Below, in pieces: positions 10,401 to 48,822 of a stretch of DNA of 64,000 nucleotides (within the stretch, counting starts at the first letter, position 1; the number at the start of each line of letters is the position of its first letter). The translations under genes were made by a program, and so were the position numbers. Location of the stretch: the IMG/VR virus record IMGVR_UViG_3300027749_002876, positions 310,001-374,000 of that record; one strand, 5' to 3'. Under the pieces are notes generated by a model. That model was given only the letters and a program-made list of their open reading frames with translations, was not told the DNA's origin and ran no database searches.

Positions 10401-13400
10401 AATTCTAATGCAGTTCCATAATATGGTTGGCTACCGTAGTCAACATTTAATGCATTAACACTTTGTGCATATACGTAAGCGCCAGGATTATTTACAGTTT
10501 CATTGTATACTGACAAATAATCATACATATAGACTGCACCTGCATTAATAAAACTATCTAAAAACTGTGTTGTATTGTTATCAAACAGTGTATCATTGTT
10601 ATAATTTTCATCATCACTTGCATCAAATGTAGTTTCTGCGTATCTAGCAGAAACAGGTGCACTTACCACAAATGAACCTGCTGAATTGAATTTAATTGTA
10701 TGACCAAATTCTGTTCTACCCTGGCTGTGCGGATCATTAATCAATTGCGTTTGTGTATATATTTTTATACCTAATTGGTCTAATACATCTGCATTTAATA
10801 CTGATAATGTTAACTTAGCATTGATATATGCCAAATCTATACTAATAACTTGTATGGTTAAAATATTATCGATTGATGCTGAAGCAGTAACATTTGTAAT
10901 ATTTGCCGCGGCAATTGTATTGGCTACAGTTGTTGCGTTGCCTACAGGTAATGACACTGAATAACCATTAAGTAAAATAGTTGCCGGTTCAGTTAGATTA
11001 CATTCAGCATAACCAGTTATTATACCGTAACTACCGCCACCATATGTATAACGATATACTGCACCTTCTTGATTTTTATTGTTTATTTCAAAAGGAGCAC
11101 CTATTAGTATTTCATTTGCATAAGTATCTACGGCTAAACTGTAACCAAAGTTTGTTCCAACTTCTGGATTAGAATCCATTGAAGTAAATTCTTGCGTTAA
11201 TATAAATTCTGATCCACTAACATTTATAATATCACCTGCTGTTAATGAGCTATAGATGCTTATACTTGATGTAGATACAGCGTATTCATTATCATCAATT
11301 AATGTACCATTAACACTAACAAAGATAGGTTCATCCTGTGCAACCATTGTCATATTACCGGATGAGTTATTCAAAGTTACGGTTGAGCCATTTCTAGTCA
11401 ATGATAGTGTTACAGTAGAACCAATAATTGTTTTGATATAATAAACTTGATTTAATGCTACATTACCATATACATTCCCTGTAAATATTACAGGTGTTCC
11501 GTTTACACCTGCAATTAAACCAGTAACATTATTTAATGTGATAGCATTACTTAATATACTTGATGCAGTTTTTAACAGAATAGTTGGTTGATATATCAAA
11601 GTAAATATTTGTGGAGTATCAGGGAAGCTATTATAAGGAGCTTCAAATGTTTGCACTAATCTTTCAAAAGAATATGCATAACCCAAATCATCAACACCGC
11701 TATCTTGGTAAGGTGCACTTATAATAATATTATTTCCATAATAATTAGTAGAAATAGAATATCCAAAATTATCACCACCATTTGATACGGTGCCAGTACC
11801 TGATTGTGTTGAAGCATTACAAGTAAATTTTATTCCTACTGTATTAGATGATGCTCCTAATGCCACAAAGTCAGTAGTGCCTAAAGATTCTATAACGTAT
11901 ATTCCACCTACATTTAAATTACCAACACCAATGATGTCCGGAGTATTAATGATATTTGAATATTCATATTGGCCGGTAAGTTGAGATTTACGATAAACAT
12001 AAACTAAATTTTGGTCAGATGCAGAAATATACAACCAATTTTGATCTCCGGACAATGCGACAGATGAGCCCCAGTTAACTACAGAATTATTGCTAGGTGA
12101 TTCGATCACTTGATATTCTTGTAATTCATTTATTAACTTATTAATAACTAAATCATAGATATATACTTTTCTGTCAGAATAAGATGCACCGGTTGGTTGT
12201 GATATTACAAATAAATTATCTGTATAAGAAATAGTAGAACCAAAAGAATTACCATTAGTTATTGTTTGTACAATACTAAATGAATTAAACACAGGACTAT
12301 ATGAATAACGATATGCGGCTCCAACTTCAGCATCAGTAACTAAGTATCCTAAATTAGGAGTAATTGCAACTGCACTACCATATGTTATTGATTCAGTTTT
12401 AAATAACTCATCCTCATAAACATAGTTTAAACTCTTGCGATATACAGCCCAAGAGCCGTCATTGTTTTCATCTACCCATACTTTATTTTTTACAAATTCA
12501 CTGTCAAGTAATGGCAATGTATTAATATCTTTAGGTGTCGCAACACGTTGTGATGAGAATTTAAAAGCTACACCTTGACCAAGAATTGTAGTTACAGACG
12601 GTGATAAACTTAATAATATTGTTACTCTAAAATTATCAACAACACTTGAAACAATTCTGTAACCATTAACACTATCATTAAAATTAATAATAGCAAATGG
12701 TTGATACTTAGTTAAATCATGAGGTGTAGCAAATTGCACAGTTACTGTACCATTCATATTATTAACAGCACCTATTACTTGACCAGCACTAGATGGAGTA
12801 TATACTTGCCATGTACTAAGGTAATCTGCTAACCATACATATTCATTTACGTATAATTTAGAAAGTGGTGTAACCGCAGTATTCAACCCATTATAATAAT
12901 ATGCTGAAATTTTTACATCATTAAAATTAACGTATCCAGCATCCGGGAACACTGTGTTTGGAGTATCAGATGGTAATGTAGGCAATACATTAGGGTTATT
13001 GATAGGTCTACCATAATTGAATATTGAATATAGAGGAACTTCTTGCTGTACTCCATCAGTATATACACCGTTAGTTAAGCCAACAATACTAGGATTACTT
13101 GTTAGTAAATTTTGATTCAAACGGAAATCTACAAAGTTATTGTTTAGTACACCACCAAACTCTCCAGTCTTAATGGCCCAGTTATCATAGATATCATAAT
13201 CAATTCCACCTTGTGGTAATGCTAATCCTTTAAAATTATTTGCCGCAACTCTTGTGCCTTTTTCTTTAATAAGATTCTTATAAACATTGACTTGTGTTAT
13301 ATCTGTTAGGTCAGCAAGTGCAAGATAATCACGTGGTCTATATCCAATCAATGACCAACTTAACAAATCACTATCTTGGTCTAAATTACCTTTATTTGTA

Positions 13401-16400
13401 TCATAAAATAGTGTACTTTCATATGAACGTGTGGAACTATTAGGTAACAATCCCTTTTGAATTTCATTATAATCTGTTACTTTCCAATCTTGTTCTTCAA
13501 ATATTTCTTTTGCATTTAATACTTTTAATGCAAACCAATATCTATTTTTATACCTAACGATACTGCCACGAGTATATTTTGAATTAGTACTCCATTCTTC
13601 TATGTTATCTTGATTTAAAACAAACCCCTGTGCATCAACAGTACCGTTCCATTCAGCAGATTTTGTACCTCTGGTTAAAATACGATTTTGTCTTAGTCCG
13701 GTAGTCAAATTATATAAAACATCATTAAACACTGTTACGTTATCAAAAACAATACCATGCTCAAAGTTACTGATATTAAATTGACCATATGCAACAGTAT
13801 CGCCTTCATTTAGTGGTCTAGCACTAAAGAATGTGCTATCACGATTAATAGACAAATCTACACTTTGTATCGGATAGAAATTTTGATTTAATATAAAGTT
13901 TTGTTTTTGTAGTGTCAATGGTTGTACAACATGACTATCTTTATTGATTGTAATTAAATTAGCGGCTGGATTTAAATTAACTAAACTACCTACTTCCCAA
14001 CCAGATTGTGACCAATATAATAATTCAGTAATCATTTGACGCCAGTTAACATCTATACCAGATTCAATTTGGTCAAATAATACACCTTCAGTTAATAAAA
14101 ATTGACCGTAACTGGCAACAAATTGACTTAATGATTGTATATCAACAAATTCTGTACCATAAGGAATTATATTAGTTTTTGTTTCAGTATAATCATTTGA
14201 AATTTGTACTGAAATGTCACCTACGGTGATTTTGTTATAGTTACCATTAATTTTAGGTGTTACTGTTGTAAAATAAGCCGTGTCTTGTGAATTACCAAAG
14301 ACTTTCCAACCTGTACTTGTACTTTGTACAATTATACCACTGTATATAATAGTAGTTGTAGGTATGTTGTCATACAATAGTACACTATAACTTTCATCAG
14401 GAATTAACAATGACGCATTTCTACTGTTTGGTGTTCCTTTTTCTACATAGAATCCAAGCAAACTCTTATCACTAAATCCAGCAAGTCTATAAATTAACCT
14501 TACATCTAAATTATCAAACAAATCAGTAATGTTCTGTGTTGCATTAACACCAACTTGTTTTTCGTAATCAACAATCCAATTAACATAACTTGTCTTAGCA
14601 GTACCAGTACCATATATGGCAACATCACTGATAATCAAATGACTACGATTATTTACTAGATACTGATTAAACTCAGTACTATATTTGTAATTGTCTACAT
14701 CAAACCCTAAGTTAAAAAATTGAGCAGGTTTAGTAAGGGCAAGAATCTTCATTAAATCAAACGGCCAACTACTACTTCTACGATAACTAAATTCTGCAGG
14801 GCCAACATCGCCAACTACCCAATCATTACGGAAAGTTCGTTGACTATAATTACCCATGACAGCATCGAACGGTGATAACAAATTGCCGGCACTGTCTACT
14901 GGTATAACTTGTAACAATTCTTCTCTAATAAATTCAGGTAACACAATTGGATTACCGTTATTCCAATTAATACCCGCAGACATATCTCCCCATAATATTA
15001 AGTTATCACTTGTATAAGGAGCAGGACCGTATCTATTAGTCCACCAACTAGGTTCATCAGTAAAGCCAATCATTTCCCATGGACTTATATTTGGAGTGCT
15101 AGTATCGTAAAAATATTCATATATACCTCTCCAAAAACCTTGTTCAAATGCTTGACCATTAATCTTATTACCTGATTGATTATAGTTGTAACTATACTGG
15201 TCAGTTGATTGATAAAACTGTTTTTTGTATTCAATACGATTTTGTCCAACCCAGTTTAAAAAATACTGGCTATATATTTGTAATACTTCATCATATGAAT
15301 AATCTGTAGTTCTAAAGAATCCAGGTATTACATCATATTTGCTTACTGGAATTAAATCTGACAATTTTAAATTATTGTAAATTCTAGTCTCAAACTCTAA
15401 TAGTGCTTGATCCTTAAAATCAACTAAATATCCATCAATGTAATCACCATACAACTTAGTATAAGAACCATCGTGACCTAATATAAAATATGTAGGTTGT
15501 GAGTAATTAGGATCTAGTACAACGCCGGGTATAAATGAGGGATATAAACCTAACTTAGTTGGTGTATTAGGTATATAACTTCCAAATGTTTGATTGTATT
15601 CTCTAATAGTTACAATATCCCCTGGTAATAAATCTTTTGTAATAGTTAGTGATGGACTATCTGTACTTACTATATAATCTTGGTTAATTATTAATTGAAT
15701 AGTTGAAGTAAAATTATTAACCGTAGTTGTCAAATAAACCAATACACCATAATAATTAGCAGTGTCAAAATTATATATGCGTGTTAATGGATAGATACTT
15801 ACATCTAAAGAATTAGCAAAGGTGTATATATTTGTAGCATATGCTGATTTGTTTGGCAACATATCACTCCAGAAAAAAGGTTCTGAATCAGTTTTATTCG
15901 CAGTAATTTGATCTAATGCATCATCTAATATAGTTGCCGGCGTTTGTCTTGTGGTAAAATCAGTTTTATCTATTGTATAAACCAACAATGATTTAAAATT
16001 TATATATTGTTGACTATTGTATTGTAATGAGTTAAACAAATTGTGATTTGGTGATCTTAACAATGATCCTGGTAATGCCAATGAGGCACTGTTCTGAATA
16101 ATTTTAGTACCCCATGGTACAAGATTTCCCAAATCTCTATAATTGTTTGAACCAAAAATAGTACCAGTTGTGTTTGGATTATTATAGAAAATACTTTGAT
16201 ACTGTCCGCGTATATCGCCTACATTTATTACAGTTACGTCATTATTGAATGGGTTATTTTGTAAGTTGATAGGTATTTGATAATATGCAGTAGCACTTAC
16301 TTGGTCACTTAACAATGTTATTTCAACTACGGTATCAATTAATGGATTAGGTACTGTGAAATTTACAATGGTAGAATTGTCTGTAATAGTAAAAGTGTAA

Positions 16401-19135
16401 GTTGCTGTATCTTGTAATACGTTATTAACATAGACTTGAATATTGGGCCATACTGTATTAGTAGCGGCTGCAATATCACATGTATAGGTTGTAGTTGCTT
16501 CAGACGCAACATAGTTAAAAGAAAATATTTGATATTGACGGCTTTCTGCAACCGCAGTTTGCCAACCCAATTGTCTAACTACCGTTGTTCTAGAGGTATA
16601 ATTATATACATATCCAGTATTAACTTTTTGTGTGATTGGTGATGACCCCTGTACATAATTAAAAGTAGCACTATTTAAAGGTACGTCAAAACTTATATCA
16701 CCCACGTTGTTAACTGAACTATAACGAAGTGGAAACCCTAATATAATATCTTTTATACCTGAACCAATTCCATAGCTGAATAATTTATTTCCTGCAAAAG
16801 ATGTACCAACATATACCTCTTTATTACCAAAACTAACACCGTCATTGTCAAAAACATCAAAATAAGGTGCTTGATTAACAGTTGTTTTTTGTTGTGCTAA
16901 TAACCAAATATTACCATCAAAGTAAAAATCTTTACCTTGATTGTTATAACCCTTGAAAGCAAAAGTACATTCTAGTGGTAATACTAATCCATTTTCTACT
17001 TCTGTAAGCGTAATTACTTGTGTTCCATTACCTTGTATATCAGAAAATCTCACAACATAAATTTTGTCTTTAACACTTGAAGTTGTATCAGCAGAAAATA
17101 CAATTCTTGCACCATCGTATAATGCATAATTGTCATTAGACAAATCATTAGCAATTAATGAAGATGTTGTAGTAGATACAATAGTAGTTACATTATTCCA
17201 TTCTACTGTAAGAATTAAAGTAGTTTCCCCACTGATATTAGTAATTTGTGTATTTCTAGGAAGTACATTAGTGGTATCACTTATGTATTGACCAATTTGA
17301 AAAGCGCCAGTAATATCATCCGTATCTATTGTAATAGTTGTAGTTGTTCCTGTGGCGGCTGCAATGTGAGCAGTATAAGCTGTATATACTTCAACATCTG
17401 GCCAATAGTTTTCTTGTCCAGCCACATACCTAAAGGCATCAGTTGTTCTATCATCAAAGAAATCAATTGGTGCTTTACCTATAACACCGTTATTGAATAA
17501 TCTTAAATTAGGATAAAATTCAATAATAGGGCGTTTAGCTTTATTATCTTGTGTAGCGTAAATTGTTGCAATACTAGGATTATTATTATATGTTGCTGTT
17601 GCATTAATTACGTCTATGTGGAACCATCTATTACTGCGGCTCCATGCATTCTTATCAATGCTATTTCTTGATATGGTAATATAATCTTGATATAAAGGAA
17701 TATATAATGTACTATCAAAATTACCTATATCATATGGCAGTGAATCGTATGGTGTGTACGTTCCTGTAGTAAAGGGTTCTGGAGCAATAAGAGTAGTAGT
17801 ATCTAATAATTGAATAGAGGTGCCCACACCTTCTACGTAATATTCACCTTCTTTATAACTTGTAGGAAAAATATCACCTGAAAAACTTACTTTAAGACCA
17901 TTTGTAAAAACTACACCATTCGGACTAGTATATTGTTCTCTACCTAATATAGTATTAACATCTAATTGATTTGTTGTATTACTTTCAATCAATCTAATAA
18001 TACCTACTTTGTTTGCGCTAGTACCATCTTGGTAATACAATGTATCTAATACTGCACTTAAGTAAGGGATAAGGTTAATTGATCCAGAGGTGTTACGATA
18101 GAAATTTCTTGCTTTCCATTGTGTTCCATAATTCGCTGTGATTTTTTGATTTGTAGGAATACTTCCTGTAGGTTCTAATATCAATAAAATTTCAGATCCT
18201 GAAGTATCATATACTATTGTATAGATTGTAGCCGATACATCTACATCGCCGGTGTTGTAGAACATCACCGTTAAACCTTGTAAACTTGTTACGCCATCTA
18301 TGTTGTTAACAGTGCTTAACAATTGACCATTTATTTGATCAAAGGGCGTAGTGGATACTAAATCTACTAGATTATTCCCGGGGAAATTATAATCATCTTG
18401 TGCATTTTTATATGGAACAGTAAATGTCACTACACCTATTGTGATGCCGTTATTTTCTACACCCAATACATCACGTGTCTGTATGTTGGGTTGTTGTGGG
18501 TCATATCCAGTTATACCAGGTTTACCTTGAATCCAAAATTCTGATGACTGATTTACATTAAATGTATATGTACCGCCACGAATTAATGTCAGTGTTGGGT
18601 TCGTTGTACCGGCTAGATTAATATCACTTGAAATATTATAACCATTAGGTAAACTTTCAACGGTGTAATCAGCCGCAGTGTAAACAATGTCAGTTGAAAT
18701 ATTAACAACTGGTGCACCAGTTGGCAACCAATAATATTGATTAAAGTTAATAATTTTATCTAGGTTGGTAAAACTATCCCATGAGTAGAATTCACTATTA
18801 AACAATCTATCATTGTTATTTGTTATACCGCCTTCTAAACTTAATGCATCAATTATACCAGGATAGCTAATGAAATCCTTAGCTGTGCTAGTATTTGTTT
18901 TTGTAAATACAACGCCTGGATCTAATTGATAATCTGTTCTTGTTTTAGTAGGTTCAACTACGTAACTGTCTTTAGCATTAATACCGTAACCAAATCTGCT
19001 ACCAACATAGCCTTCAATTCGCATCGTGTTTGGTTGGTCAACAATTTGATCCAGTGTTGCACCTAAAAATTGTGCGTTGGTAGGTGTTTGAAATATTTCT
19101 GGTAAAAAGCTTAGTGTTCTAATTCGTGCTGCCAT
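1466..19135 (-). CDS. Giant (5889 aa) multidomain baseplate wedge/appendage protein in the gp7 position
   Basis: Single uninterrupted ORF directly downstream of gp6. Contains YLNEVKPYHVVI, seven FG-GAP-like blades, about 12 G-x-P-x-x-F...YY...FTIS beta modules and three inserted AGSF...GTT.F...GTG modules. Confidence 0.7.
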   Translation of the reverse strand: MAARIRTLSFLPEIFQTPTNAQFLGATLDQIVDQPNTMRIEGYVGSRFGYGINAKDSYVVEPTKTRTDYQLDPGVVFTKTNTSTAKDFISYPGIIDALSLEGGITNNNDRLFNSEFYSWDSFTNLDKIINFNQYYWLPTGAPVVNISTDIVYTAADYTVESLPNGYNISSDINLAGTTNPTLTLIRGGTYTFNVNQSSEFWIQGKPGITGYDPQQPNIQTRDVLGVENNGITIGVVTFTVPYKNAQDDYNFPGNNLVDLVSTTPFDQINGQLLSTVNNIDGVTSLQGLTVMFYNTGDVDVSATIYTIVYDTSGSEILLILEPTGSIPTNQKITANYGTQWKARNFYRNTSGSINLIPYLSAVLDTLYYQDGTSANKVGIIRLIESNTTNQLDVNTILGREQYTSPNGVVFTNGLKVSFSGDIFPTSYKEGEYYVEGVGTSIQLLDTTTLIAPEPFTTGTYTPYDSLPYDIGNFDSTLYIPLYQDYITISRNSIDKNAWSRSNRWFHIDVINATATYNNNPSIATIYATQDNKAKRPIIEFYPNLRLFNNGVIGKAPIDFFDDRTTDAFRYVAGQENYWPDVEVYTAYTAHIAAATGTTTTITIDTDDITGAFQIGQYISDTTNVLPRNTQITNISGETTLILTVEWNNVTTIVSTTTSSLIANDLSNDNYALYDGARIVFSADTTSSVKDKIYVVRFSDIQGNGTQVITLTEVENGLVLPLECTFAFKGYNNQGKDFYFDGNIWLLAQQKTTVNQAPYFDVFDNDGVSFGNKEVYVGTSFAGNKLFSYGIGSGIKDIILGFPLRYSSVNNVGDISFDVPLNSATFNYVQGSSPITQKVNTGYVYNYTSRTTVVRQLGWQTAVAESRQYQIFSFNYVASEATTTYTCDIAAATNTVWPNIQVYVNNVLQDTATYTFTITDNSTIVNFTVPNPLIDTVVEITLLSDQVSATAYYQIPINLQNNPFNNDVTVINVGDIRGQYQSIFYNNPNTTGTIFGSNNYRDLGNLVPWGTKIIQNSASLALPGSLLRSPNHNLFNSLQYNSQQYINFKSLLVYTIDKTDFTTRQTPATILDDALDQITANKTDSEPFFWSDMLPNKSAYATNIYTFANSLDVSIYPLTRIYNFDTANYYGVLVYLTTTVNNFTSTIQLIINQDYIVSTDSPSLTITKDLLPGDIVTIREYNQTFGSYIPNTPTKLGLYPSFIPGVVLDPNYSQPTYFILGHDGSYTKLYGDYIDGYLVDFKDQALLEFETRIYNNLKLSDLIPVSKYDVIPGFFRTTDYSYDEVLQIYSQYFLNWVGQNRIEYKKQFYQSTDQYSYNYNQSGNKINGQAFEQGFWRGIYEYFYDTSTPNISPWEMIGFTDEPSWWTNRYGPAPYTSDNLILWGDMSAGINWNNGNPIVLPEFIREELLQVIPVDSAGNLLSPFDAVMGNYSQRTFRNDWVVGDVGPAEFSYRRSSSWPFDLMKILALTKPAQFFNLGFDVDNYKYSTEFNQYLVNNRSHLIISDVAIYGTGTAKTSYVNWIVDYEKQVGVNATQNITDLFDNLDVRLIYRLAGFSDKSLLGFYVEKGTPNSRNASLLIPDESYSVLLYDNIPTTTIIYSGIIVQSTSTGWKVFGNSQDTAYFTTVTPKINGNYNKITVGDISVQISNDYTETKTNIIPYGTEFVDIQSLSQFVASYGQFLLTEGVLFDQIESGIDVNWRQMITELLYWSQSGWEVGSLVNLNPAANLITINKDSHVVQPLTLQKQNFILNQNFYPIQSVDLSINRDSTFFSARPLNEGDTVAYGQFNISNFEHGIVFDNVTVFNDVLYNLTTGLRQNRILTRGTKSAEWNGTVDAQGFVLNQDNIEEWSTNSKYTRGSIVRYKNRYWFALKVLNAKEIFEEQDWKVTDYNEIQKGLLPNSSTRSYESTLFYDTNKGNLDQDSDLLSWSLIGYRPRDYLALADLTDITQVNVYKNLIKEKGTRVAANNFKGLALPQGGIDYDIYDNWAIKTGEFGGVLNNNFVDFRLNQNLLTSNPSIVGLTNGVYTDGVQQEVPLYSIFNYGRPINNPNVLPTLPSDTPNTVFPDAGYVNFNDVKISAYYYNGLNTAVTPLSKLYVNEYVWLADYLSTWQVYTPSSAGQVIGAVNNMNGTVTVQFATPHDLTKYQPFAIINFNDSVNGYRIVSSVVDNFRVTILLSLSPSVTTILGQGVAFKFSSQRVATPKDINTLPLLDSEFVKNKVWVDENNDGSWAVYRKSLNYVYEDELFKTESITYGSAVAITPNLGYLVTDAEVGAAYRYSYSPVFNSFSIVQTITNGNSFGSTISYTDNLFVISQPTGASYSDRKVYIYDLVINKLINELQEYQVIESPSNNSVVNWGSSVALSGDQNWLYISASDQNLVYVYRKSQLTGQYEYSNIINTPDIIGVGNLNVGGIYVIESLGTTDFVALGASSNTVGIKFTCNASTQSGTGTVSNGGDNFGYSISTNYYGNNIIISAPYQDSGVDDLGYAYSFERLVQTFEAPYNSFPDTPQIFTLIYQPTILLKTASSILSNAITLNNVTGLIAGVNGTPVIFTGNVYGNVALNQVYYIKTIIGSTVTLSLTRNGSTVTLNNSSGNMTMVAQDEPIFVSVNGTLIDDNEYAVSTSSISIYSSLTAGDIINVSGSEFILTQEFTSMDSNPEVGTNFGYSLAVDTYANEILIGAPFEINNKNQEGAVYRYTYGGGSYGIITGYAECNLTEPATILLNGYSVSLPVGNATTVANTIAAANITNVTASASIDNILTIQVISIDLAYINAKLTLSVLNADVLDQLGIKIYTQTQLINDPHSQGRTEFGHTIKFNSAGSFVVSAPVSARYAETTFDASDDENYNNDTLFDNNTTQFLDSFINAGAVYMYDYLSVYNETVNNPGAYVYAQSVNALNVDYGSQPYYGTALEFTNNYVMIGTPNFRPGYDNGQVVIYNNTSGDPDWSVYRNSAPIVNTDAIQNAQLYSVTTNNTLDNLDYIDPLQGKILGAVRQNLDIVSNADPANYNSPDATNKGSAVWGPGELGKLWFDTSTTKFVNYHQSNDVVYNSVWWGRVFPGSDVKVCSWITSDVEPIAYPGPGTPNNFENYVVQYRLNSTGSIVPVYYYWVRNTNIVFNQIGKTLSDTICESYISTPLATGISYMAPIQPNVFGLYNCASNINASDTVLHIGFATGTNDDVSHSVYSLIRSKYADDFLPGLPGTGTTIVPESLYNKMLESFSGVDRTGGVVPDPNLPKPVQSGILTRPRQSFFYNRFKALENYLKFYNEVLLQYPLTETSSLKFLFTKGEINPSTVDNPNWPGTPLLFYNTQDYWEVINWWAPGYDNNTRASLLVESYYDLATINAQLGLIVTVNKNGEGLQETYVYDGVNWNRIGLQNGTIEFNSSLWDYADARLGFGDNFFDTTPYDTFPSEETRYIIRALNEELPSSLLQYRNDALILLFEYIVSETIESQNYLPWLNKTSFIDVGHTIRELLPLEVFQSDNQEFLSGYLNEVKPYHVVIKDFLFKYTGSDNYLGNITDFDLPAEYSTQYEQYITPELVYSNPSGINQYLPTDPIWQSKSYINWFNNQGLSITGVPNYPITILSSFVSLNSSAMVVDNVYGFPTTGVVLIGTEEIAYSSVDRAYSTLSGLTRGVNDTPITNHIPGEQIIIDLPPILLLNSGRGYAEPPKVIAYIDTAIYPAPRRAAILQPVMNLDTILRIDVIDPGDGYQVLPEIIIDPSEIITFSSTVVDLTSRTITLQTQFVQTGDLIKYYVGTDTTPIGGLDDGQYYYLAVLESSPFYVVALYTTYADALQDRDRIIFTNVGSGNNNNIAVSARASCVSTSAPIRENNIKLRFDRTTYTSRVTNWAPDNFYGSFYAGVFNNSTQIASSNITLEATQPPITDILASAQGATFEIQDVSNNQVLQWSSLVRTVSETVASNIITLSYSSEEPNASGSTIGFYIGMPIKFVGAVGTTNLVNNTTYYVASIIGESEFTISATVGGSTFTLNSETISVAGLSCYAGAVTNTAIVTIAYPGILNVTATATTSNFITSPLLPTGTGGTSGFYVGLPVYFVGSVFGGIIDNETYYIITIVDIETFTISTEADPLILSVTATTATGNLITVSSTLELNVNDPIIFIGTTFGGINAGQVYYIRSVDSGTTITIASVINGGAVPLTTASGSCTLTSQTTAVQLTTATGSMTMNVGLPVSPGQVTGQLFTFYPTLTLDNTPYIEVTGTNGNLVTRDTVAATSNGNYLYLRYLSGGLTNIYNNLPFVLSENIGGLTAGTEYYVVSNGTISVEVASSSSSTNKYTLASGTLTTGFYIGMPISFSGAVFGNVVELVTYFINSYDLGGDSFTITDAIGGGDLVLTTDNGQMTLTADNPYITLSTSSGGSVEPITVNQIKETVFTQSPDTSSPPTFNIGNKLGGYIIEVVNQGSGYTFDNTITISGTDLGGTSPLNDLVLTVSGIDVIIANPNFIYSPDNNFLLPIESDGNITSVIGSGTPAGIVNQYYLKVITATECEVYTDSLMTVPVNGITLETEYQLGDYVFLPEPFYFNQSIVKYNNKVWQCIISNNDNEFILGKWELMDSGDRQLNELDRIIGYYQPTVNMPGLDLTQLVTGITYPNGTYLGNAFAPEDQYTIDTNLEDKAFESVGDTAYDVQGDPFLSGYGPEELVPGLISDNLTMIVTTRPGTDWNASIYGHVGFNVVSTEIIPSTNQTEFSFNGIVENPASMALFDIDYSTNLSVRIYDFTVDWVNKIITLGDPVTSTYGLRIDLYEVGNGDQLVKSNSQAIPFIDNMITGFVEMPLNCNYSASRFNGSGVIRPTTDPKQVIAIETDALDNGIVCETVDYFVVNSSIIFQGDVFGGITTDTLYYVKTISYITNKITVSTSNPGGIAGPAFDVTSATGSMLVNIQSTNGLVWTDPIVIHNGTNLVLGEQGIISETNSGTNTIVVNSTDNYAVNDTITFSNAMSFNNFTLTAGSFVLGQLYKIATVGTTNFMAIGALSNTVGVIFTATGTGTGTGTVLAGIIPLQSYYITSIINNEFTDEFTVSSSLAGTDVILNNASGIALCVTNDYAITIVDQGITAKLVFSSQYNQNDDFVVLSIFGETAPIQYGYTVPEVQIFTLTSASTEFALTNFVGQDNADNAIVEYNGLRLTNNKDYTINSSTNTLSLTIITTVGSILSVTSYNLTDRQYLNTIYAGSFTGSVTTVLTISNATHEPGFDDLNYDIGYYSPGPDYLTLGSGSTTSINVNDAIKFNDPTIGGIIANQIYYIVEIFNSTTFAVSENVGGIPVTLITESGSMTGITNPPTVANITAINNSINQPLAVTTVTNTTDTTNIITCGTTAGFILNQPVIFRNITPIGFGNINADGTVYYVKSVADLTSFTISETLVAGVAGPTLELTTDTGLMVASVGGNNSVTITTGVPHNLVENDIVRINGVLGSIELNNNTYYAKVINPTQIGLYFTPYNPTLYYVNDPVTQVSTYLGNGYVWFDRIFTLETTNASATTTLNNAITVSSNRQLILGTPVLFTGTVFGGIQSQVTAGSFIVGNTYQIIETGTTFWTSIGSLSNDPGTTFVATGVGFGNGIATAIYYVNDLIGVYEFNVTAVRNGAVYPLTTGTGSMNVSLWEQTNVDRLWVTVNGKRVPSSALYLNPQNNLSILTVIQPGDIVTITNMIPTATPNETVYIENVNRSNEQSIFRSNSLTRTWLTYGLQDIDDVIYLEDVSRVTASIVQNETAPVVVDDTMSIGLNGDKNTISEVIVYNNTSSLLVDPAEYRIVIENTAPVLVIDIDPTSPSIIVGNNLTVTVILGNLIYINGEQIRYTTVNFDENTLSGLQRGANGTGKLTYIPKFTTVYGILSSNVLPDVYNGFSWNSFNYNLVDGDPLQISTTYPANFLNADVP

Positions 19136-43667: not shown

Positions 43668-44312
43668 ATGGCTTTGTATCTCAAAGAGCACTTGACATTT
43701 GACCGCGCCGGAATGGTTGTGGAAAGTGTCAGTGAAGGTGACAAGAAGAACCTTTATATGAAGGGAATCTTCATTCAGGGTGGGGTAAAGAACGCTAATG
43801 AGCGTGTTTACCCTGTTTCTGAGATTGAAGCCGCAGTCGGAACTCTTAATGAACAAATTACAAGTGGTTACTCAGTATTAGGTGAAGTAGATCACCCAGA
43901 CGATTTAAAGATTAACTTAGACCGTGTATCACATATGATTACAAGCATGTGGATGGATGGTGCTAATGGATTCGGCAAATTAAAGATTTTACCAACTCCA
44001 ATGGGAGAACTTGTAACAACTATGTTACAAAGTGGTGTGAAACTCGGCGTATCAAGTCGTGGCAGCGGTAACGTTGACGACATGAACGGCAAAGTTAGTG
44101 ACTTTGAAATAGTCACTGTGGATATTGTTGCACAACCTAGCGCACCAAATGCTTATCCTAAAGCAATCTATGAAGGTATGATGAATATGCGTCATGGTCA
44201 TAAATTGTTGGATATTGCAAAGGACGCAAGAGGCGACAAGAAAGTAGAGAAGTACTTGAAAGAGGAAGTAATGCGCCTTATCAAGGATCTCAAAATTAAC
44301 AAAGGGGAATAA
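43668..44312 (+). CDS. gp21: Prohead protease gp21, 214 aa
   Basis: GIFIQGGVKNANERVYP, LGEVDHP, LGVSSRGSG and DIVAQPSAPNAY. Confidence 0.96.
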   Translation: MALYLKEHLTFDRAGMVVESVSEGDKKNLYMKGIFIQGGVKNANERVYPVSEIEAAVGTLNEQITSGYSVLGEVDHPDDLKINLDRVSHMITSMWMDGANGFGKLKILPTPMGELVTTMLQSGVKLGVSSRGSGNVDDMNGKVSDFEIVTVDIVAQPSAPNAYPKAIYEGMMNMRHGHKLLDIAKDARGDKKVEKYLKEEVMRLIKDLKINKGE

Positions 44313-44314
44313 GC

Positions 44315-45418
44315 ATGTTTGATGCTATCAAGCCATTACTTGACAGTGGACTTATCAATGAAGACACCGGTGCTCAGTTAAATGAAGCATGGGAAGCTAA
44401 GTTAGATGAAGCTCGCCAACAAGTTCGTGCAGAATTACACGAAGAATTCGCACAACGTTATGAACATGACAGAAGCGTGATGGTTGAAGCCCTTGACAAG
44501 ATGGTTACAGAAAGCCTATCAGAAGAAATTGAAGAATTTCACACTGAGAAGCAAGCAATGAACGAAGACCGTGTGAAAGCACAAATGAAACTACGTGAAA
44601 GTGCAACAAAATTCAATGATTTTATGGTTACTAAACTAGCCGAAGAAATCCGTGAACTACGTTCAGATCGTATGATTCAAAAAGAAAGTCAACAAAAGCT
44701 AGAGCAATTTATTGTTCATGCTTTAGCCCGTGAAATCAAAGAGTTCGCTCAAGATAAACAGGCTGTGGTTGAAGCTAAGGTTAAGTTAGTTGCAGAAGGT
44801 CGTCAACAATTAGAAAAACTTAAAGCACGTTTTGTTGCTGAAAGTGCTAAGAAGTTGTCTATCGCTGTAGCAGGACAGTTAAAGGGTGAATTAGGTCAGT
44901 TGAAAGAAGATATCAAAATTGCAAAAGAAAACAGTTTTGGTCGTAAGATTTTTGAAAGTTTTGCAGGTGAATTTTCAGTTACTCATTTAAATGATAAAGC
45001 TGAAACAAGAAAACTAATGCAAAAATTAGAAGATAAAGATCGTCAATTAGCTGAATCCATTACACAAATCAACAACAGTAAAAAGTTAGTTGAATCAAAA
45101 GAACGTGAAGTTCGTATTATCAAAGAGTCAAATATTCGTGAGAAGACTATGACTGAGTTACTTTCTACTCTTAACGAGGAAAAAGCAAAGGTAATGCAGG
45201 ACTTACTAGAAAGTGTGCAAACAGGTAAACTGCAAGCAACTTTCGATAAGTATCTACCAGCAGTACTAAACACTGGCGTTGTTAAAAAAGCTCAAAAAGC
45301 TAGTTTAACTGAGTCAAAGATGATTAGTGAAGTTACTGGGGATAAAGCTGCCAAACAAGAAGTTGATATGGAACAACGTGACAACGTTATAGATATCAAG
45401 CGTCTGGCAGGGCTTTAA
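44315..45418 (+). CDS. gp22: Prohead scaffold protein gp22, 367 aa
   Basis: Coiled coil, E/K-rich, between protease and capsid genes; GRKIFESF and C-terminal IKRLAGL. Confidence 0.85.
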   Translation: MFDAIKPLLDSGLINEDTGAQLNEAWEAKLDEARQQVRAELHEEFAQRYEHDRSVMVEALDKMVTESLSEEIEEFHTEKQAMNEDRVKAQMKLRESATKFNDFMVTKLAEEIRELRSDRMIQKESQQKLEQFIVHALAREIKEFAQDKQAVVEAKVKLVAEGRQQLEKLKARFVAESAKKLSIAVAGQLKGELGQLKEDIKIAKENSFGRKIFESFAGEFSVTHLNDKAETRKLMQKLEDKDRQLAESITQINNSKKLVESKEREVRIIKESNIREKTMTELLSTLNEEKAKVMQDLLESVQTGKLQATFDKYLPAVLNTGVVKKAQKASLTESKMISEVTGDKAAKQEVDMEQRDNVIDIKRLAGL

Positions 45419-45448: not shown

Positions 45449-46651
45449 ATGTCAAAAGTTCTATTAGAAAGCCGTTGGGACGAGACCAAGGAAGCTCTGT
45501 TAGAAGGCTTAAAGGGCACTCGCCGCTCAACTATGGGTGTTATCTTAGAAAATACTAAGAAACAACTACTTGCTGAATCTTCAGTAGGTACAACTACAGC
45601 TGGTAACATCGCTACACTAAACCGTGTGATTCTTCCAGTTATTCGTCGTGTCATGCCAACCGTTATCGCTAACGAATTGGTAGGTGTACAACCAATGACA
45701 GGACCAGTTGGTCAAATTCACACACTACGTGTACGTTATGCAAATAGCTTAGTGGATAACAGTGCCGCTCAAACTAGCGTTACAGCTGGTCAAGAAGCAT
45801 TGAGTCCATTCACAATTGCTCAGGCATATTCACGTCAGCCAAGTGGCGCCGCTGGTGATACAGCAACAGGCTACACTGGTAACAACACTGCTGCCTTAGA
45901 AGGCAACGGTGGTCGTCAAATCAGCGTACAAATCTTACGTCAAGCTGTTGAAGCTAAGTCACGTAAGTTGCAAGCACGTTGGACATTTGAGGCAGCACAA
46001 GATGCACAGAGTCAACATGGTATTGACGTTGAAGCAGAAATCATGGCAGCATTAGCACAAGAAATTACTGCTGAAATTGACCAAGAGATTCTATTGTCGT
46101 TAGCGACATTGGCATCTACTGAGTACACATTCAACCAAGCTACTGTATCAGGTACAGCTACTTACGTTGGTGACGAACACGCTGCCTTAGCTGTTCTAAT
46201 CAACCGTGTTGCTAACTTGATCGCCCAACGTACACGTCGTGGCGCAGGTAACTGGGCTGTTGTATCTCCAGCAAGTTTGACAGTATTGCAATCTGCAACT
46301 ACTTCAGCGTTTGCTCGTACAACAGAAGGTACATTCGAAGCTCCAACTAACACTAAGTTCGTTGGTACATTGAACGGTGCTATGCGTGTATTCGTTAACA
46401 GTTATGCTCCTGATACACAACCTGTATTGGTTGGTTATAAAGGTTCAAGCGAAACTGATGCAGCCGCATTCTATTGCCCATACATTCCATTAATGAGCAG
46501 TGGAGTTGTATTGGATCCATCAACATTCGAACCAGTCGTATCATTTATGACAAGGTACGGATACATCGAATTAACGAATACGGCCAGCTCATTTGGTAAC
46601 GCTGCCGATTACGTTGGAGAAATTGCGGTTCAGAACCTTACGTTTCAGTGA
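45449..46651 (+). CDS. gp23: Major capsid protein gp23, 400 aa
   Basis: VIRRVMPTVIANELVGVQPMTGPVGQIHTLRVRY, VEAKSRKLQARWTFEAAQD, FYCPYIPL, FMTRYG. Confidence 0.98.
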   Translation: MSKVLLESRWDETKEALLEGLKGTRRSTMGVILENTKKQLLAESSVGTTTAGNIATLNRVILPVIRRVMPTVIANELVGVQPMTGPVGQIHTLRVRYANSLVDNSAAQTSVTAGQEALSPFTIAQAYSRQPSGAAGDTATGYTGNNTAALEGNGGRQISVQILRQAVEAKSRKLQARWTFEAAQDAQSQHGIDVEAEIMAALAQEITAEIDQEILLSLATLASTEYTFNQATVSGTATYVGDEHAALAVLINRVANLIAQRTRRGAGNWAVVSPASLTVLQSATTSAFARTTEGTFEAPTNTKFVGTLNGAMRVFVNSYAPDTQPVLVGYKGSSETDAAAFYCPYIPLMSSGVVLDPSTFEPVVSFMTRYGYIELTNTASSFGNAADYVGEIAVQNLTFQ

Positions 46652-46692
46652 AATTCACTACATTTTAATATCTTTACAGATATTATTAAATC

Positions 46693-46718
46693 AAAAGGGT
46701 GCTTTGGCACCCTTTTTT
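46693..46718 (+). terminator. Rho-independent terminator after the capsid gene
   Basis: AAAAGGGTGC-TTTG-GCACCCTTTTTT. Confidence 0.9.
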
Positions 46719-46719
46719 G

Positions 46720-46748
46720 TTGTCCTTTATTAAGTAATAGTATATAAT
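46720..46748 (+). promoter_or_regulatory. Sigma70-type promoter for the homing endonuclease gene
   Basis: TTGTCC-17 nt-TATAAT; a late-type AATAAATA (46763-46770) also precedes the ATG. Confidence 0.55.
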
Positions 46749-46775
46749 GAAACGCAGCCGATAATAAATAACTCT

Positions 46776-47756
46776 ATGAAACATTTTATATACAAGACAA
46801 CTCACACAAACGGAAAATACTACATAGGTAGACATAGCACTACTAACCTTGAAGATGGATATCTAGGTTCAGGAAAGTGGGTATCACAAATCAAAAAGAA
46901 GGATAAGTTAGTCCGAGAAATAGTTGAGTTTGTAGATTCATTTGAGGAACTAATAATAAAAGAAGATGAATATTTAGCAGAACATTACGGTAAACCTAAC
47001 TGTATGAATATGAGTAATAAAAGCACAGGCGCAGCCACTGGATTAGCTAATCCTATGACACGTGATGAAGTTAAATCAAAATTTCAAGGGGACAATCATT
47101 GGTCCCATAAGAATCCTGAAATGTTTGCAGAAAAACTAGCAGGAGATAATCATTGGATGAATAAAGATCCAGAACGAAAAGAAGATTTTATAAAAAACAA
47201 CCCCAACCTAGATGGTAGAAACGCAAAGGCAGCAATGAAAAACGGTAAACACAATAGTATCACTAACAATCCAAGTACTATCAACGCACTAAATGGTACT
47301 CATCATTGGCAGAATGGTAAAGCGCCAAACTATGAAGGTAAGCTAAACAAGAAGTTGATTGAAGAAGGTCGTCATAACTTTTTAGGACCAGACACAAATC
47401 AAAAACGAATAGATGAGGGAACACACAACTTTGTAGGTTCAGCCGCAAATCTAAAGATGTTAGCAGAAGGTAAACATCCATCACAACGAAAGATGACTTG
47501 TAGTTGTGGTAAGACTGTTAGTAGTAGTATGTATAAAAGATGGCACGGAGATAACTGTAAAATGAAAGTAATAAAAATGAATTCAAGACAATATGAAAAA
47601 ATGCGTAATGAACAACTACGAGAAACAATGGAGAAAGCAGGCATAACAGATTATACAAATGTATGTCTAAGTGCAGACCAACAAGAATATGAAGTTACAC
47701 TAAAAGATGGAACAGAAGTTATTATTCCTAGTGGATTACCCTATCATTATGATTGA
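46776..47756 (+). mobile_element. Free-standing GIY-YIG (Seg-like) homing endonuclease gene, 326 aa
   Basis: FIYKTT...KYYIGRH......YLGSG; repeated G-x-H-(N/H/P)-(F/W) DNA-binding-like units; terminal CSCGK...RWHGDNCK motif. Confidence 0.9.
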
Positions 47757-47800
47757 TTAGCATAAATACAATATCTCAACGGGATGGGAAGTTTACAATC

Positions 47801-47824
47801 AAGCACTATTCGTAGTGCTTTTTT
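47801..47824 (+). terminator. Rho-independent terminator with UUCG loop
   Basis: AAGCACTA-TTCG-TAGTGCTT-TTTT. Confidence 0.88.
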
Positions 47825-47868
47825 GTTATCTACATTATTTTGCTAAATACTTCAAAGGAAAACATACT

Positions 47869-48822
47869 ATGGAAATTACTGGTGGAATGACATTTTTAGG
47901 TGGTATGACGGTAACACAACAACCCCCACCCACAAATAAAGCTATTTTTGGATTTGGTGATACTGGGTCAGTAACAGCAATAACAAACCTAGTCAGCAAC
48001 ACTGGTGTAGTTGCTAATGATACAACAGGGGTTGGTACTGCTAGAAGCGGAGTAGCGGCCGCTGGTTATGGAACAGATAAAGCTATATTTGGTTATGGAT
48101 TAACCAGTATAAGTGTATCAATAACTAATCTTGTTTCTAACACAGGTGTGGTTGGTAATGATGTTACTGGAGTTGGTACTACTAGACAACAATTAGCAGC
48201 CGCAGGTTATGGCACTGATAAAGCTATATTTGGTTATGGTTATAATAATAGCAGTGGTGCTAAATCAACGACCAACTTAGTATCAAACACTGGTGTTGTT
48301 GCCACAGATACAACAGGTGTAGGTACTGCTAGATATGGAATAGCAGCATCCGGGTACGGTAGCTCCGGACAAGCAATATTTGGATATGGATATGCACCAG
48401 CACTCACACCAAGCTATACATCAATAACTAACCTAGTATCAAATACCGGTGTAGTAGCTACTGATACCACAGGTGTTGGTACTGTAAGACAATTTCCTGC
48501 TGCCGCAGGCTATGGCACAGATAAAGCTATATTTGGATATGGTCAAATTGGCAACCCGACCTACGCTTATGTATCGATGACTAATCTAGTCTCAAATACT
48601 GGTGTTGTTGCAACAGATACGACAGGTGTCGGCACGATTAGAACTGGGCTGGCAGCAGCCATATACGGTAGTTCTGGGCAAGCAATATTTGGATATGGTA
48701 CAAATGCTAGTAATCAATCAATAACCAACTTAGTAAGTAATACTGGTGTCGTTGCTACTGATACGACTGGGGTTGGCACTGCTAGAAGTTATCTTGCAGC
48801 CGCAAATTACGGACTAGCATAA
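47869..48822 (+). CDS. Six-bladed Kelch-like beta-propeller protein 1 (~317 aa)
   Basis: Six repeats of AIFGYG-loop-TNLVSNTGVVATDTTGVGTAR-xxx-AAxGYG. Start reassigned to ATG 47869 (AAGGA RBS, GCTAAATA promoter at 47842-47849). Confidence 0.8.
   Translation: MEITGGMTFLGGMTVTQQPPPTNKAIFGFGDTGSVTAITNLVSNTGVVANDTTGVGTARSGVAAAGYGTDKAIFGYGLTSISVSITNLVSNTGVVGNDVTGVGTTRQQLAAAGYGTDKAIFGYGYNNSSGAKSTTNLVSNTGVVATDTTGVGTARYGIAASGYGSSGQAIFGYGYAPALTPSYTSITNLVSNTGVVATDTTGVGTVRQFPAAAGYGTDKAIFGYGQIGNPTYAYVSMTNLVSNTGVVATDTTGVGTIRTGLAAAIYGSSGQAIFGYGTNASNQSITNLVSNTGVVATDTTGVGTARSYLAAANYGLA

What the first reader, a model, noticed from the sequence alone, without database searches (positions are those of the whole stretch)
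47761..47824. Tiny late transcription unit with no ORF: candidate ~55-nt small RNA carrying GGGAUGGGAAG
Seen: late promoter CATAAATA (47761-47768), then ~30 nt (ATATCTCAACGGGATGGGAAGTTTACAATC), then a UUCG-capped terminator (47801-47824). A second late promoter for the propeller genes follows (47842). Established: CsrA/RsmA-sequestering sRNAs display GGA motifs, and purine-rich GGGA tracts can also mimic Shine-Dalgarno sequences. Inference: a dedicated phage sRNA (RNA-binding-protein sponge or antisense regulator), or the native capsid-gene 3' element displaced by endonuclease insertion.
Basis: partly seen in the sequence, partly recalled or inferred. Interest (0 to 1): 0.6.

Follow-up and report, generated by a model that had tools for sequence, protein, structure and literature searches.

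The report
Conserved phage capsid-gene tail RNA, now stand-alone
The tiny promoter-to-terminator unit is a real, single-copy RNA element (invariant GGGAUGGGAAG plus a terminator) that normally ends the capsid mRNA in related freshwater jumbo phages; here a selfish endonuclease gene cut it off from the capsid gene and it carries its own late promoter, which suggests the short RNA itself has a function that is still unknown.

Summary
CATAAATA sits at 47761-47768, GGGATGGGAAG at 47781-47791 and a UUCG-capped terminator at 47801-47824. There is no conserved ORF, and the next gene has its own late promoter at 47842.

NATAAATA is a real late-promoter-like signal in this genome, 18-24x enriched upstream of genes. 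This is the only clear promoter-then-terminator unit without an ORF among 128 intergenic sites.

The 11-mer followed by a terminator occurs in at least 118 distinct IMG/VR sequences and once per long genome. In 56 relatives it lies 9-49 nt after the capsid (gp23-like) stop codon. In about 40 others it follows a small virion-module gene.

In 14 relatives an insert, usually a homing-endonuclease gene, separates it from the capsid gene. In 11 of these a late-promoter word sits 20-28 nt upstream of the motif, against 0 of 56 direct cases (p about 1e-10).

It is the native capsid 3' element, displaced by a GIY-YIG endonuclease cassette and re-equipped as a roughly 51-nt late RNA gene.

Transcription and function are not shown. 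The CsrA-decoy idea fits the motif's shape but fails the multi-site criterion, and the host is unknown. Rfam and the literature hold no match.

The parts
45449..46651 (+). Major capsid protein gene (gp23-like). In most relatives this is the gene whose mRNA ends in the element.
   Evidence: Pfam Gp23 E=3e-98 and PHROG 138. Cultured relatives are 62-67% identical.
46693..46722 (+). Intrinsic terminator directly after the capsid gene (term1). It cuts the capsid mRNA off from everything downstream.
   Evidence: Terminator scan: 10-bp stem followed by a T-run. Every insertion-bearing relative has such a terminator 22-65 nt after the capsid stop codon.
46763..46770 (+). Late-promoter word AATAAATA, 5 nt before the endonuclease ATG (leaderless-type spacing).
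46776..47756 (+). Free-standing GIY-YIG-type homing endonuclease gene, present or absent among close relatives.
   Evidence: PHROG 314 homing endonuclease E=1.9e-24. Pfam GIY-YIG is only weak, E=0.06, below its cut-off. Among the 80 capsid-anchored relatives it is found only in L015 and L019; a homologue also lies in L166.
47761..47768 (+). Late-promoter word CATAAATA of the small unit. The predicted start is about 47773-47775.
   Evidence: Enrichment. Spacing calibration: TAAATA-to-ATG distance peaks at 4-5 nt. The same 'ATAAATACAATATCTCAA' junction occurs in L003, L009, L012 and L162 behind different endonuclease genes.
47774..47780 (+). Pyrimidine-rich 5' flank (TCTCAAC) that can pair with the 3' half of the motif.
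   Evidence: Fold. Family profile: position -4 is C in 80%, -3 and -2 are pyrimidines in 82-88%, and G is nearly absent from -9 to -1.
47781..47791 (+). Invariant motif GGGATGGGAAG, a single copy in the 524-kb contig.
   Evidence: unique in the contig. (invariant). (at least 120 IMG/VR loci). (one copy in each of 5 long relatives; the reversed control found none).
47792..47800 (+). A/C-rich spacer (TTTACAATC).
   Evidence: Spacers in the family are 3-12 nt and A/C-rich.
47801..47824 (+). Intrinsic terminator with an 8-bp stem, UUCG loop and U-run (term2). This is the 3' end of the small RNA and of the endonuclease mRNA.
   Evidence: 118 of 122 distinct family members have a hairpin of -6 kcal/mol or better at this place, with many different stems.
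47842..47850 (+). Separate late promoter (GCTAAATAC) of the downstream gene that starts at 47869.
   Evidence: Its promoter score is at the 90th percentile of gene-proximal sites.

Best explanation
Positions 47761-47824 hold a stand-alone late gene for a roughly 51-nt non-coding RNA (about 47773 to 47824). Its body is a conserved, single-copy RNA module of a clade of freshwater jumbo myophages. The module has a short pyrimidine tract, the invariant GGGAUGGGAAG, a short A/C-rich spacer and an intrinsic terminator.

In most relatives the module is simply the last 40-60 nt of the major-capsid mRNA, or of another late virion-gene mRNA. It is then made in large amounts without a promoter of its own.

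In this genome a GIY-YIG homing-endonuclease cassette (upstream terminator, late promoter, gene) lies between the capsid gene and the module. A late promoter 12 nt upstream of the motif now transcribes the module on its own. The endonuclease mRNA should also end in it.

Shown: the anatomy, the conservation, the single-copy status, the change of host gene, and the link between separation and a promoter.

Inferred: that the promoter fires; that the RNA accumulates; that it acts in trans by presenting the purine motif to a partner, probably with GGGA in the loop of a 4-6-bp hairpin. My best guess for the partner is a GGA-binding host protein of the CsrA type or another RNA-binding protein. That step is speculative.
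For: The promoter word is a real signal: ATAAATA is 17.9x enriched upstream of genes. The arrangement is unique in the contig.

The motif is invariant in 31 aligned relatives whose flanks average 62% column identity, and in 118 distinct sequences overall. The terminator stems differ freely while staying paired.

Position: 9-49 nt after the capsid stop codon in 56 distinct loci, and 4-24 nt after the stop codon of small virion-module ORFs in about 40 loci.

There is one copy per genome in 6 long records. In two relatives whose capsid protein is 77-78% identical, the capsid 3'UTR lacks the motif. The single copy lies elsewhere on the contig, 128 kb away behind a 105-aa gene in G001.

In 14 loci with an insert, a late-promoter word lies at -20 to -28 in 11, against 0 of 56 direct loci. 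Fisher p = 1.7e-10, or 5e-8 after collapsing to junction classes.

All of these loci carry an extra terminator straight after the capsid gene, so the capsid mRNA no longer reaches the module. In most of them a TAAATA-type late-promoter word also follows the module's terminator, ahead of the next gene; L009 has none.

Different endonuclease families (GIY-YIG, SegE-like, HNH+NUMOD3) sit upstream of the same promoter-motif junction. L012 has lost the endonuclease gene but kept the promoter and module.

The predicted RNA folds into two hairpins, -12 kcal/mol, z = -2.6.
Against: No transcript was observed. Metatranscriptome contigs cover the capsid gene but nothing at 46608-47813, and contigs cannot show a 50-nt RNA.

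The promoter scores only at the 25th percentile of gene-proximal sites.

Three insertion loci (L004, L193, L166) lack a promoter word.

The small 5' hairpin is no more stable than shuffled controls (-4.56 against -4.08 kcal/mol). Its 3' arm is invariant, so covariation cannot be tested.

No partner is identified. No complementary site exists in phage translation-start regions: the best is -12.8 kcal/mol, against a mean minimum of -14.4 for shuffled seeds.

Cultured relatives (PA5oct, an Asteriusvirus, a Vibrio phage and Phosso) lack the motif, so nothing can be carried over from studied phages.
Confidence: 0.55

Rival explanations
1. The element acts only in cis, as a 3'UTR element that stabilises or tunes the mRNA it ends. 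In the window it now serves the endonuclease mRNA or is a relic, and the CATAAATA word is not a working promoter.
For: In about 95 loci the module is plainly the 3' end of a protein-coding late mRNA and has no promoter of its own. The endonuclease mRNA in the window would end in it. The promoter score is modest.
Against: A promoter word appears at a fixed distance in 11 of 14 separated loci and in none of 56 direct ones. The module is intact in every separated locus, including L012 where no gene is left upstream. It changes host gene between genomes while staying single-copy, which a gene-specific cis element would not be expected to do.
Confidence: 0.2
2. It is a lambda-like late leader: promoter, short terminated transcript (as in pR'-6S-tR'), then read-through into the downstream genes when an antiterminator acts on the hairpin.
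For: The order promoter, about 50 nt, terminator, genes matches that layout. The GGGA-capped hairpin could in principle be a boxB-like protein site.
Against: The downstream gene has its own strong late promoter after the terminator. Downstream genes differ in almost every relative. In 56 relatives there is no promoter and the module simply ends the capsid mRNA.
Confidence: 0.05
3. The 11-mer is a DNA site, such as a homing-endonuclease recognition or recombination anchor, or a packaging or replication signal, and not an RNA element.
For: It is single-copy per genome. At least four kinds of insert, mostly endonuclease genes, lie immediately upstream of it.
Against: In the capsid-anchored loci, which were not selected for a terminator, it always lies on the sense strand between a stop codon or late promoter and a terminator. 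It is conserved in about 95 loci that have no endonuclease gene. It gains a promoter when separated. A DNA site needs none of these.
Confidence: 0.07
4. It is a micro-ORF: the ATG inside the motif starts a 20-codon peptide.
For: ATG at 47784 opens a 20-codon frame.
Against: There is no spaced SD. In 118 relatives the frame gives 101 different first-8-residue peptides and lengths from 3 to more than 22 codons. Only Met-Gly, which lies within the motif itself, is shared.
Confidence: 0.02

Closest known systems
3'UTR-derived bacterial sRNAs, both those with an internal promoter (DapZ, MicL) and those processed from the mRNA (CpxQ, SroC). From my own knowledge; cf. references 68-70 in PMC9163698.
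   Same: A short conserved single-stranded segment lies just upstream of the parent gene's intrinsic terminator and shares that terminator. Both ways of making the RNA seem to occur in this one family: riding on the mRNA in most relatives, and an own promoter here.
   Different: No RNA species, chaperone or target has been shown. The seed is purine-rich and finds no phage target. The weak Rfam DapZ match (11.8 bits against a 56-bit gathering score) is noise.
CsrA/RsmA-sequestering RNAs (CsrB, RsmZ) and single high-affinity CsrA hairpins (SELEX consensus RUACARGGAUGU; ANGGAN hexaloop), as reviewed in PMC7652899.
   Same: In 54% of family members the sequence reads Y-A-GGGAUG, which fits ARGGAUG. 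A short pyrimidine:G stem can present the GGA in a loop of 4-6 nt.
   Different: There is one loop GGA plus one GGA in the stem, not 5-22 sites. The window's copy has C rather than A before the GGGA. The phage encodes no CsrA and the host is unknown. No binding was tested.
Late small non-coding RNAs of lytic phages, for example the LUZ7 intergenic sRNA1-3 (PMC9163698).
   Same: Short, ORF-less transcripts made late from an intergenic spot in the structural region. Some have their own start site and some are processed.
   Different: Those were seen experimentally but have no known conserved motif. This one is seen only by comparative genomics but has an invariant 11-mer in at least 118 distinct sequences.
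Free-standing homing endonuclease genes next to the capsid gene: T4 segD after gene 23 (from memory) and the PA5oct Hef-like endonuclease after its capsid gene.
   Same: An endonuclease gene with its own late promoter is inserted just downstream of the capsid gene and is polymorphic among relatives.
   Different: Here the insertion splits a conserved RNA module from its gene, and the module is found with a promoter of its own. I know of no description of this for T4 or PA5oct.

Membership tests
Any Rfam 15 family | Covariance-model score at or above the family's gathering score | tested here: not met
   The best matches are 17.4 bits on the minus strand (RsaE, gathering score 79) and, on the plus strand, 15.7 bits (rimP leader, gathering score 47); DapZ reaches 11.8 bits (gathering score 56). 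All have E > 0.5.
CsrA-sequestering sRNA (CsrB/RsmZ type) | Many (about 5-22) GGA motifs, mostly in hairpin loops | tested here: not met
   Only two overlapping GGA in 51 nt, and at most one in a loop.
CsrA-sequestering sRNA (CsrB/RsmZ type) | A single site that fits the high-affinity consensus (A-R-GGA-U-G in a short hairpin loop) | tested here: inconclusive
   It fits in the 54% of family members that have A at -1. The window has C at -1. The hairpin is no more stable than shuffles (consensus from PMC7652899).
CsrA-sequestering sRNA (CsrB/RsmZ type) | A CsrA-family protein present in the phage or host and bound by the RNA | not testable with these tools
   No PF02599 match in the phage contig. 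The host is unknown. The beta-type two-piece tmRNA hints at a lineage in which CsrA is uncommon (PMC13443453).
3'UTR-derived sRNA | Lies between a stop codon and the gene's own intrinsic terminator, with a conserved segment upstream of the hairpin | tested here: met
   56 loci after the capsid gene and about 40 after small virion-module ORFs. The 11-mer is invariant.
3'UTR-derived sRNA | A stable short RNA species detected and bound by Hfq or ProQ | not testable with these tools
   Only Logan contigs of RNA runs were on hand, and none lies on 46608-47813.
T4-type late promoter | A TATAAATA-like word about 5-7 nt upstream of the start, enriched before late genes | tested here: met
   17.9-24.5x enrichment. 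84 of 128 intergenic sites have a start codon within 30 nt downstream. Spacing peaks at 4-5 nt and at 16-27 nt.
T4-type late promoter | A phage late sigma (gp55-like) and clamp-dependent activation | not tested
   I did not search the contig for gp55, gp33 or gp45 homologues.
Intrinsic (Rho-independent) terminator | A G+C-rich hairpin followed by a U-run | tested here: met
   8-bp stem, UUCG loop and T6. A hairpin of -6 kcal/mol or better follows the motif in 118 of 122 family members, which the search pattern required to carry a T-run.
Lambda-type late leader (pR'-6S RNA-tR') | Downstream late genes depend on read-through from the leader promoter | tested here: not met
   The downstream gene has its own late promoter. 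Downstream genes vary between relatives. 56 relatives have no leader promoter.
Free-standing GIY-YIG homing endonuclease (ORF 46776-47756) | A GIY-YIG catalytic domain, and presence/absence polymorphism between conserved flanks | tested here: met
   PHROG 314 E=1.9e-24. Pfam GIY-YIG is only E=0.06, below its cut-off. Present in only 2 of the 80 capsid-anchored relatives (L015, L019).

The most novel reading that the evidence does not exclude
Freshwater jumbo phages carry a one-hairpin decoy RNA that rides on their most abundant late mRNA, or on its own late promoter once an endonuclease gene has split it off. It titrates a host GGA-binding post-transcriptional regulator (CsrA-like or a still unknown one) late in infection, for example to free the phage's own AAGGA-type ribosome-binding sites. 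That would be a new class of phage anti-regulator RNA. It would also be a case in which selfish-gene invasion turned a 3'UTR into an independent RNA gene.
Probability: 0.15. Interest if true: 0.8.

Novelty: new member of a known kind. Interest (0 to 1): 0.6.

Why it matters
Few phage small RNAs are known, and almost none come with comparative support. This one is an undescribed RNA family with an invariant 11-nt core. It occurs in at least 118 distinct sequences from lake viromes, at one copy per genome.

The family also records a natural experiment. At least four kinds of insert, mostly homing-endonuclease genes, have separated the element from the capsid mRNA in different lineages. In most of those lineages the element is then found with a late promoter of its own. 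That is unusually direct comparative evidence that the RNA end-piece itself, and not only the mRNA it terminates, is under selection.

The element gives a concrete, short RNA to test for protein binding. It also marks this phage clade in metagenomes. The limit is that neither the host nor a cultured phage carrying the motif is available.

Tried and rejected
1. Near-identical DNA search in GenBank phages found no match. Cultured relatives of the capsid protein (PA5oct, an Asteriusvirus, Vibrio phage 2.275.O, Phosso) have a hairpin plus terminator after the capsid gene but no GGGATGGGAAG.

2. Rfam, run on 16 kb and again on 141 nt with lax filters, gave nothing near any threshold. The minus-strand RsaE match arises only because UCCCAUCCC is the complement of the motif.

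3. Antisense targets. No site in the contig complements the 11-mer with one mismatch or fewer on an mRNA-sense strand near a start codon. Duplex energies against the translation-start regions of all called genes in the 347-kb unit are weaker than for shuffled seeds.

4. Energy test of the 5' mini-hairpin gave no better result than shuffles. RNAalifold on the MAFFT alignment predicted nothing, because the variable terminators were misaligned.

5. RNA evidence. Four metatranscriptome runs were laid as contigs. They cover the capsid gene and, in X6, 47879-48081 with exact matches, but nothing on 46608-47813. This is uninformative for a 51-nt RNA.

6. A CsrA gene in the phage: none.

7. Host inference through the phage's two-piece beta-type tmRNA. 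The first genome scan found nothing. The second hit mostly Chloroflexota, plus a few Rhodocyclaceae whose high G+C (from my own knowledge) does not fit a 37% G+C phage. No host is named.

8. The identity of the small ORFs that carry the element in other genomes: no Pfam or PHROG match. The Atlas gave only weak tail-sheath-like leads at 0.77, below a usable score.

9. A literature search for the motif string returned only unrelated primers and miRNAs.

10. A packaging or origin site was considered and set aside. In the capsid-anchored loci the motif is always co-oriented with a terminator, and it gains a promoter when separated.

Full report
**What the window is.** The window is G000:C1:310001-374000 of a 524,565-bp IMG/VR virus contig with 36.7% G+C. 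Around the finding lie a T4-type head module:
- prohead protease, 43668-44312
- scaffold-like ORF, 44315-45418
- gp23-family major capsid protein, 45449-46651

The capsid protein is 62-67% identical to those of jumbo myophages of Vibrio, Sinorhizobium, Pseudomonas (PA5oct) and E. coli (Asteriusvirus). Runs that hold the stretch are freshwater and lake metagenomes.

**Checking the observation.**
- The stop codon of ORF 46776-47756 is at 47754-47756.
- CATAAATA is at 47761-47768 and GGGATGGGAAG at 47781-47791.
- An 8-bp stem with a UUCG loop and a T-run lies at 47801-47824. The scan reports it as a terminator.
- A second late-promoter word, CTAAATA at 47843-47849, lies 19 nt before the ATG at 47869.

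As a bare word, CATAAATA is not over-represented in the window. Genome-wide, though, ATAAATA is 17.9x enriched in oriented upstream intergenic DNA: GATAAATA 24.5x, CATAAATA 21.5x, GCATAAAT 20.2x.

Of 128 intergenic NATAAATA sites, 84 have a start codon within 30 nt. Only two have a terminator-like hairpin before the next gene, and the other one is a leader hairpin directly before an SD and ATG. The promoter-to-terminator unit without an ORF is therefore real and exceptional in this genome.

The only reading frame is 20 codons from the ATG inside the motif. It has no spaced SD and is not conserved.

**Where the RNA would start.** The distance from TAAATA to the ATG of called genes is bimodal. 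One peak is at 4-5 nt (42 genes, no room for an SD). The other is broad, at 16-27 nt. The first peak places the start about 5-6 nt after the word, as for T4 late promoters (from my own knowledge). For this unit that gives a start near 47773-47775 and an RNA of about 51 nt. It folds into a small 5' hairpin plus the terminator, at -12 kcal/mol and z = -2.6.

**Relatives: the element is the native end of the capsid mRNA.** A capsid-protein scan of IMG/VR gave 80 loci at 77-97% identity.
- The genes downstream of the capsid gene differ in nearly every locus. The endonuclease ORF is present in only two of them.
- A BLAST of the 141-nt intergenic stretch found the element at 94-99% identity in L003, L009 and L012. 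Its core was found in many others.
- Anchoring on the motif showed GGGATGGGAAG in 33 of about 78 loci, mostly 9-49 nt after the capsid stop codon. It is followed by a 3-12-nt A/C-rich spacer and by a G+C-rich hairpin whose sequence changes from locus to locus while staying paired.
- In the alignment, ten consecutive positions of the motif are the only invariant block apart from the T-run.

Pooled, there are 122 distinct 100-nt contexts, and 118 of them have a hairpin of -6 kcal/mol or better.

**Single copy, and not tied to the capsid gene.** The 11-mer occurs once in this contig. It also occurs once in each of five long relatives of 110-374 kb, and the reversed control word found none.

In G001 (299.6 kb) the capsid protein is 78% identical, but its 3'UTR has only a terminator. 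The single motif copy lies 128 kb away, 15 nt after the stop codon of a 105-aa ORF that has its own late promoter. G006 is similar: its capsid 3'UTR lacks the motif, and the copy (L103) lies elsewhere on the contig.

About 40 further loci carry the motif 4-24 nt after small (105-250 aa) Ala/Thr/Gly-rich ORFs. These fall into two sequence clusters and sit in virion modules. None matches Pfam or PHROGs.

**What happens when the element is separated from the capsid gene.** Among distinct capsid-linked loci, 56 have the direct layout and 14 have an insert of 132-2082 nt. Every insertion locus has the same order:
1. capsid stop codon
2. a terminator 22-65 nt downstream
3. in most loci, a late-promoter word before the inserted ORF(s)
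4. the inserted ORF(s)
5. the motif
6. the second terminator

The inserts are of several kinds:
- GIY-YIG: the window, L019 and L166
- SegE-like GIY-YIG with NUMOD3: L061 and L009
- HNH with NUMOD3: L003, L052, L162, L163 and L193
- a 490-aa nuclease-like ORF: L155 (on the opposite strand in L133)
- an unknown 179-aa ORF: L004 and L193

In 11 of the 14 loci an NNTAAATA word lies 20-28 nt upstream of the motif. None of the 56 direct loci has one. Fisher p = 1.7e-10, or 5e-8 after collapsing to seven junction classes with a promoter word against two without.

The junction 'ATAAATACAATATCTCAA' is shared by the window, L003, L009, L012 and L162, although the gene upstream differs. L012 keeps only the last 20 nt of an HNH gene, yet it retains the promoter and the module.

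In most loci a TAAATA-type late-promoter word follows the second terminator, ahead of the next gene; L009 has no clear one. The promoter in front of the motif is therefore mostly not needed for downstream expression.

The simplest reading is that the module has to be transcribed late. When the capsid mRNA can no longer supply it, a dedicated promoter does.

**Shape of the RNA.** Upstream of the motif, the 118 sequences show a position-specific pyrimidine tract:
- position -4 is C in 80%
- positions -3 and -2 are pyrimidines in 82% and 88%
- position -1 is A in 54% and C in 39%
- G is almost absent from -9 to -1

This tract can pair with G6-G8 (and with A9 and A10) of the motif, leaving GGGA in a loop of 4-6 nt.

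A split variant in L006, L007, L017 and L018 keeps GGGA and GGGAAG but inserts a hairpin between them. It also keeps a CUUCU(U) tract able to pair with GGGAAG. This fits the same architecture.

The support is limited. The 3' arm never varies, so there is no covariation to count. The hairpin is also no more stable than with shuffled flanks.

**What it might do.** I could not establish a function.
- Base-pairing to phage mRNAs is not supported.
- The loop-presented A/C-GGGA-U-G resembles one CsrA-type site: the SELEX consensus RUACARGGAUGU, the CsrB repeat CAGGA(U/A/C)G and the RsmE ANGGAN hexaloop (PMC7652899).
- Against the CsrA idea, there is a single such hairpin, the window's copy has C at -1, and the phage has no CsrA gene.
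- The only host hint is a phage-borne two-piece tmRNA of the betaproteobacterial type, with tag ANDSQFSIAA. That points to a group in which CsrA is uncommon (PMC13443453). The hint is weak, and a scan for matching bacterial tmRNAs named no credible host.

I therefore hold the general model at about 0.55: a stand-alone late RNA derived from a conserved 3'UTR module, acting through its invariant purine motif. The CsrA-decoy version stands at about 0.15.

**Rivals.**
- A purely cis-acting 3'UTR element fits most loci. It does not explain the promoter gain, the retention in L012, or the change of host gene.
- A lambda-like leader-attenuator is contradicted by the independent downstream promoters and by the promoter-less direct layout.
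- A DNA site (endonuclease target or packaging signal) does not explain the fixed strand, the position between stop codon and terminator, or the promoter gain.
- A micro-ORF is excluded by its lack of conservation.

**Expression data.** Four lake metatranscriptomes were laid as Logan contigs. They carry many capsid-gene fragments. One run (X6) has exact matches to this phage on the capsid gene and on 47879-48081. Nothing lies on 46608-47813. Contigs cannot report a 51-nt RNA, so this neither supports nor refutes transcription.

**Novelty.** Rfam 15 has no family for it. The motif string does not appear in a relevant paper. The kind of element is known: a small phage RNA, or a 3'UTR-derived sRNA. 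The family is new, and so is the evolutionary pattern in which endonuclease invasion converts a 3'UTR into an RNA gene.

Noticed in passing
G000:C1 whole contig (outside the window): 172,924-177,012 against 520,477-524,565, and 1-173,000 against 397,000-512,000: The 524-kb record looks like a mis-join and not one genome. A 4,089-bp direct repeat at 99.6% identity links position 172,924 to the contig end, which implies a unit of about 347.5 kb. The first 173 kb or so is an inverted copy, 75-90% identical, of 397-512 kb, and it includes a second tRNA array. The window lies inside the 347-kb unit.
   Followed up: partly
Genome-wide; in the window, for example 46763-46778: The distance from the late-promoter word TAAATA to the ATG is bimodal: 42 genes at 4-5 nt with no room for an SD, against a broad peak at 16-27 nt. 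This suggests that many late mRNAs of this phage are leaderless.
   Followed up: partly
G000:C1:288480-288896 (L206:204-606, minus strand): A phage-encoded permuted (two-piece) tmRNA. It scores above the gathering threshold for Rfam beta_tmRNA (95.4 bits) and tmRNA_permuted (98.9 bits). The tag is ANDSQFSIAA.
   Followed up: partly
G000:C1:115,293-126,526 (minus strand) and from 417,045 onward (plus strand): ARAGORN reports 57 genes: 56 tRNAs in two mirrored arrays and the tmRNA. The mirrored arrays are consistent with the contig joining two related genomes.
   Followed up: no
Diverged copies lie at genome 218-220 kb, 269.7-272.5 kb and 287.5-288.5 kb.
   Followed up: no
window 1466-19135 (minus strand): A single open reading frame of 5,889 codons, followed by ORFs of 1,123, 1,071 and 884 codons on the same strand.
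   Followed up: no
L003, L004, L009, L019, L052, L061, L133, L155, L162, L163, L166, L193; PA5oct (L203): The spot just downstream of the capsid gene is a hot spot for selfish genes. At least four unrelated kinds of insert, three of them endonuclease families, occupy it in different relatives. PA5oct also has a Hef-like endonuclease gene right after its capsid gene.
   Followed up: partly
L006, L007, L017, L018 (30-90 nt after the capsid stop codon): A split version of the motif: GGGA(G/A), then an inserted hairpin CACAGAC-UACG-GUCUGUG, then (G/A)GGAAG, then the terminator.
   Followed up: partly
Genome-wide upstream regions: A second enriched upstream signal, GGTTGACAATAAAT ... TATAATAGAATCTTAAAC, looks like a sigma-70-type early promoter with a conserved start region.
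   Followed up: no
window 47733-47833, minus strand: A weak Rfam RsaE/RoxS match (17.4 bits, E=0.63) arises because the complement of the motif, UCCCAUCCC, equals the C-rich seed of that Firmicute sRNA. The motif would therefore be a perfect 9-nt mimic of a target for such C-rich sRNAs.
   Followed up: no
G000:C1:233850-234272 (minus strand): A 140-aa ORF is weakly similar (36-40% identity) to the small ORFs that carry the motif in other genomes. Here it ends in a strong terminator without the motif.
   Followed up: partly
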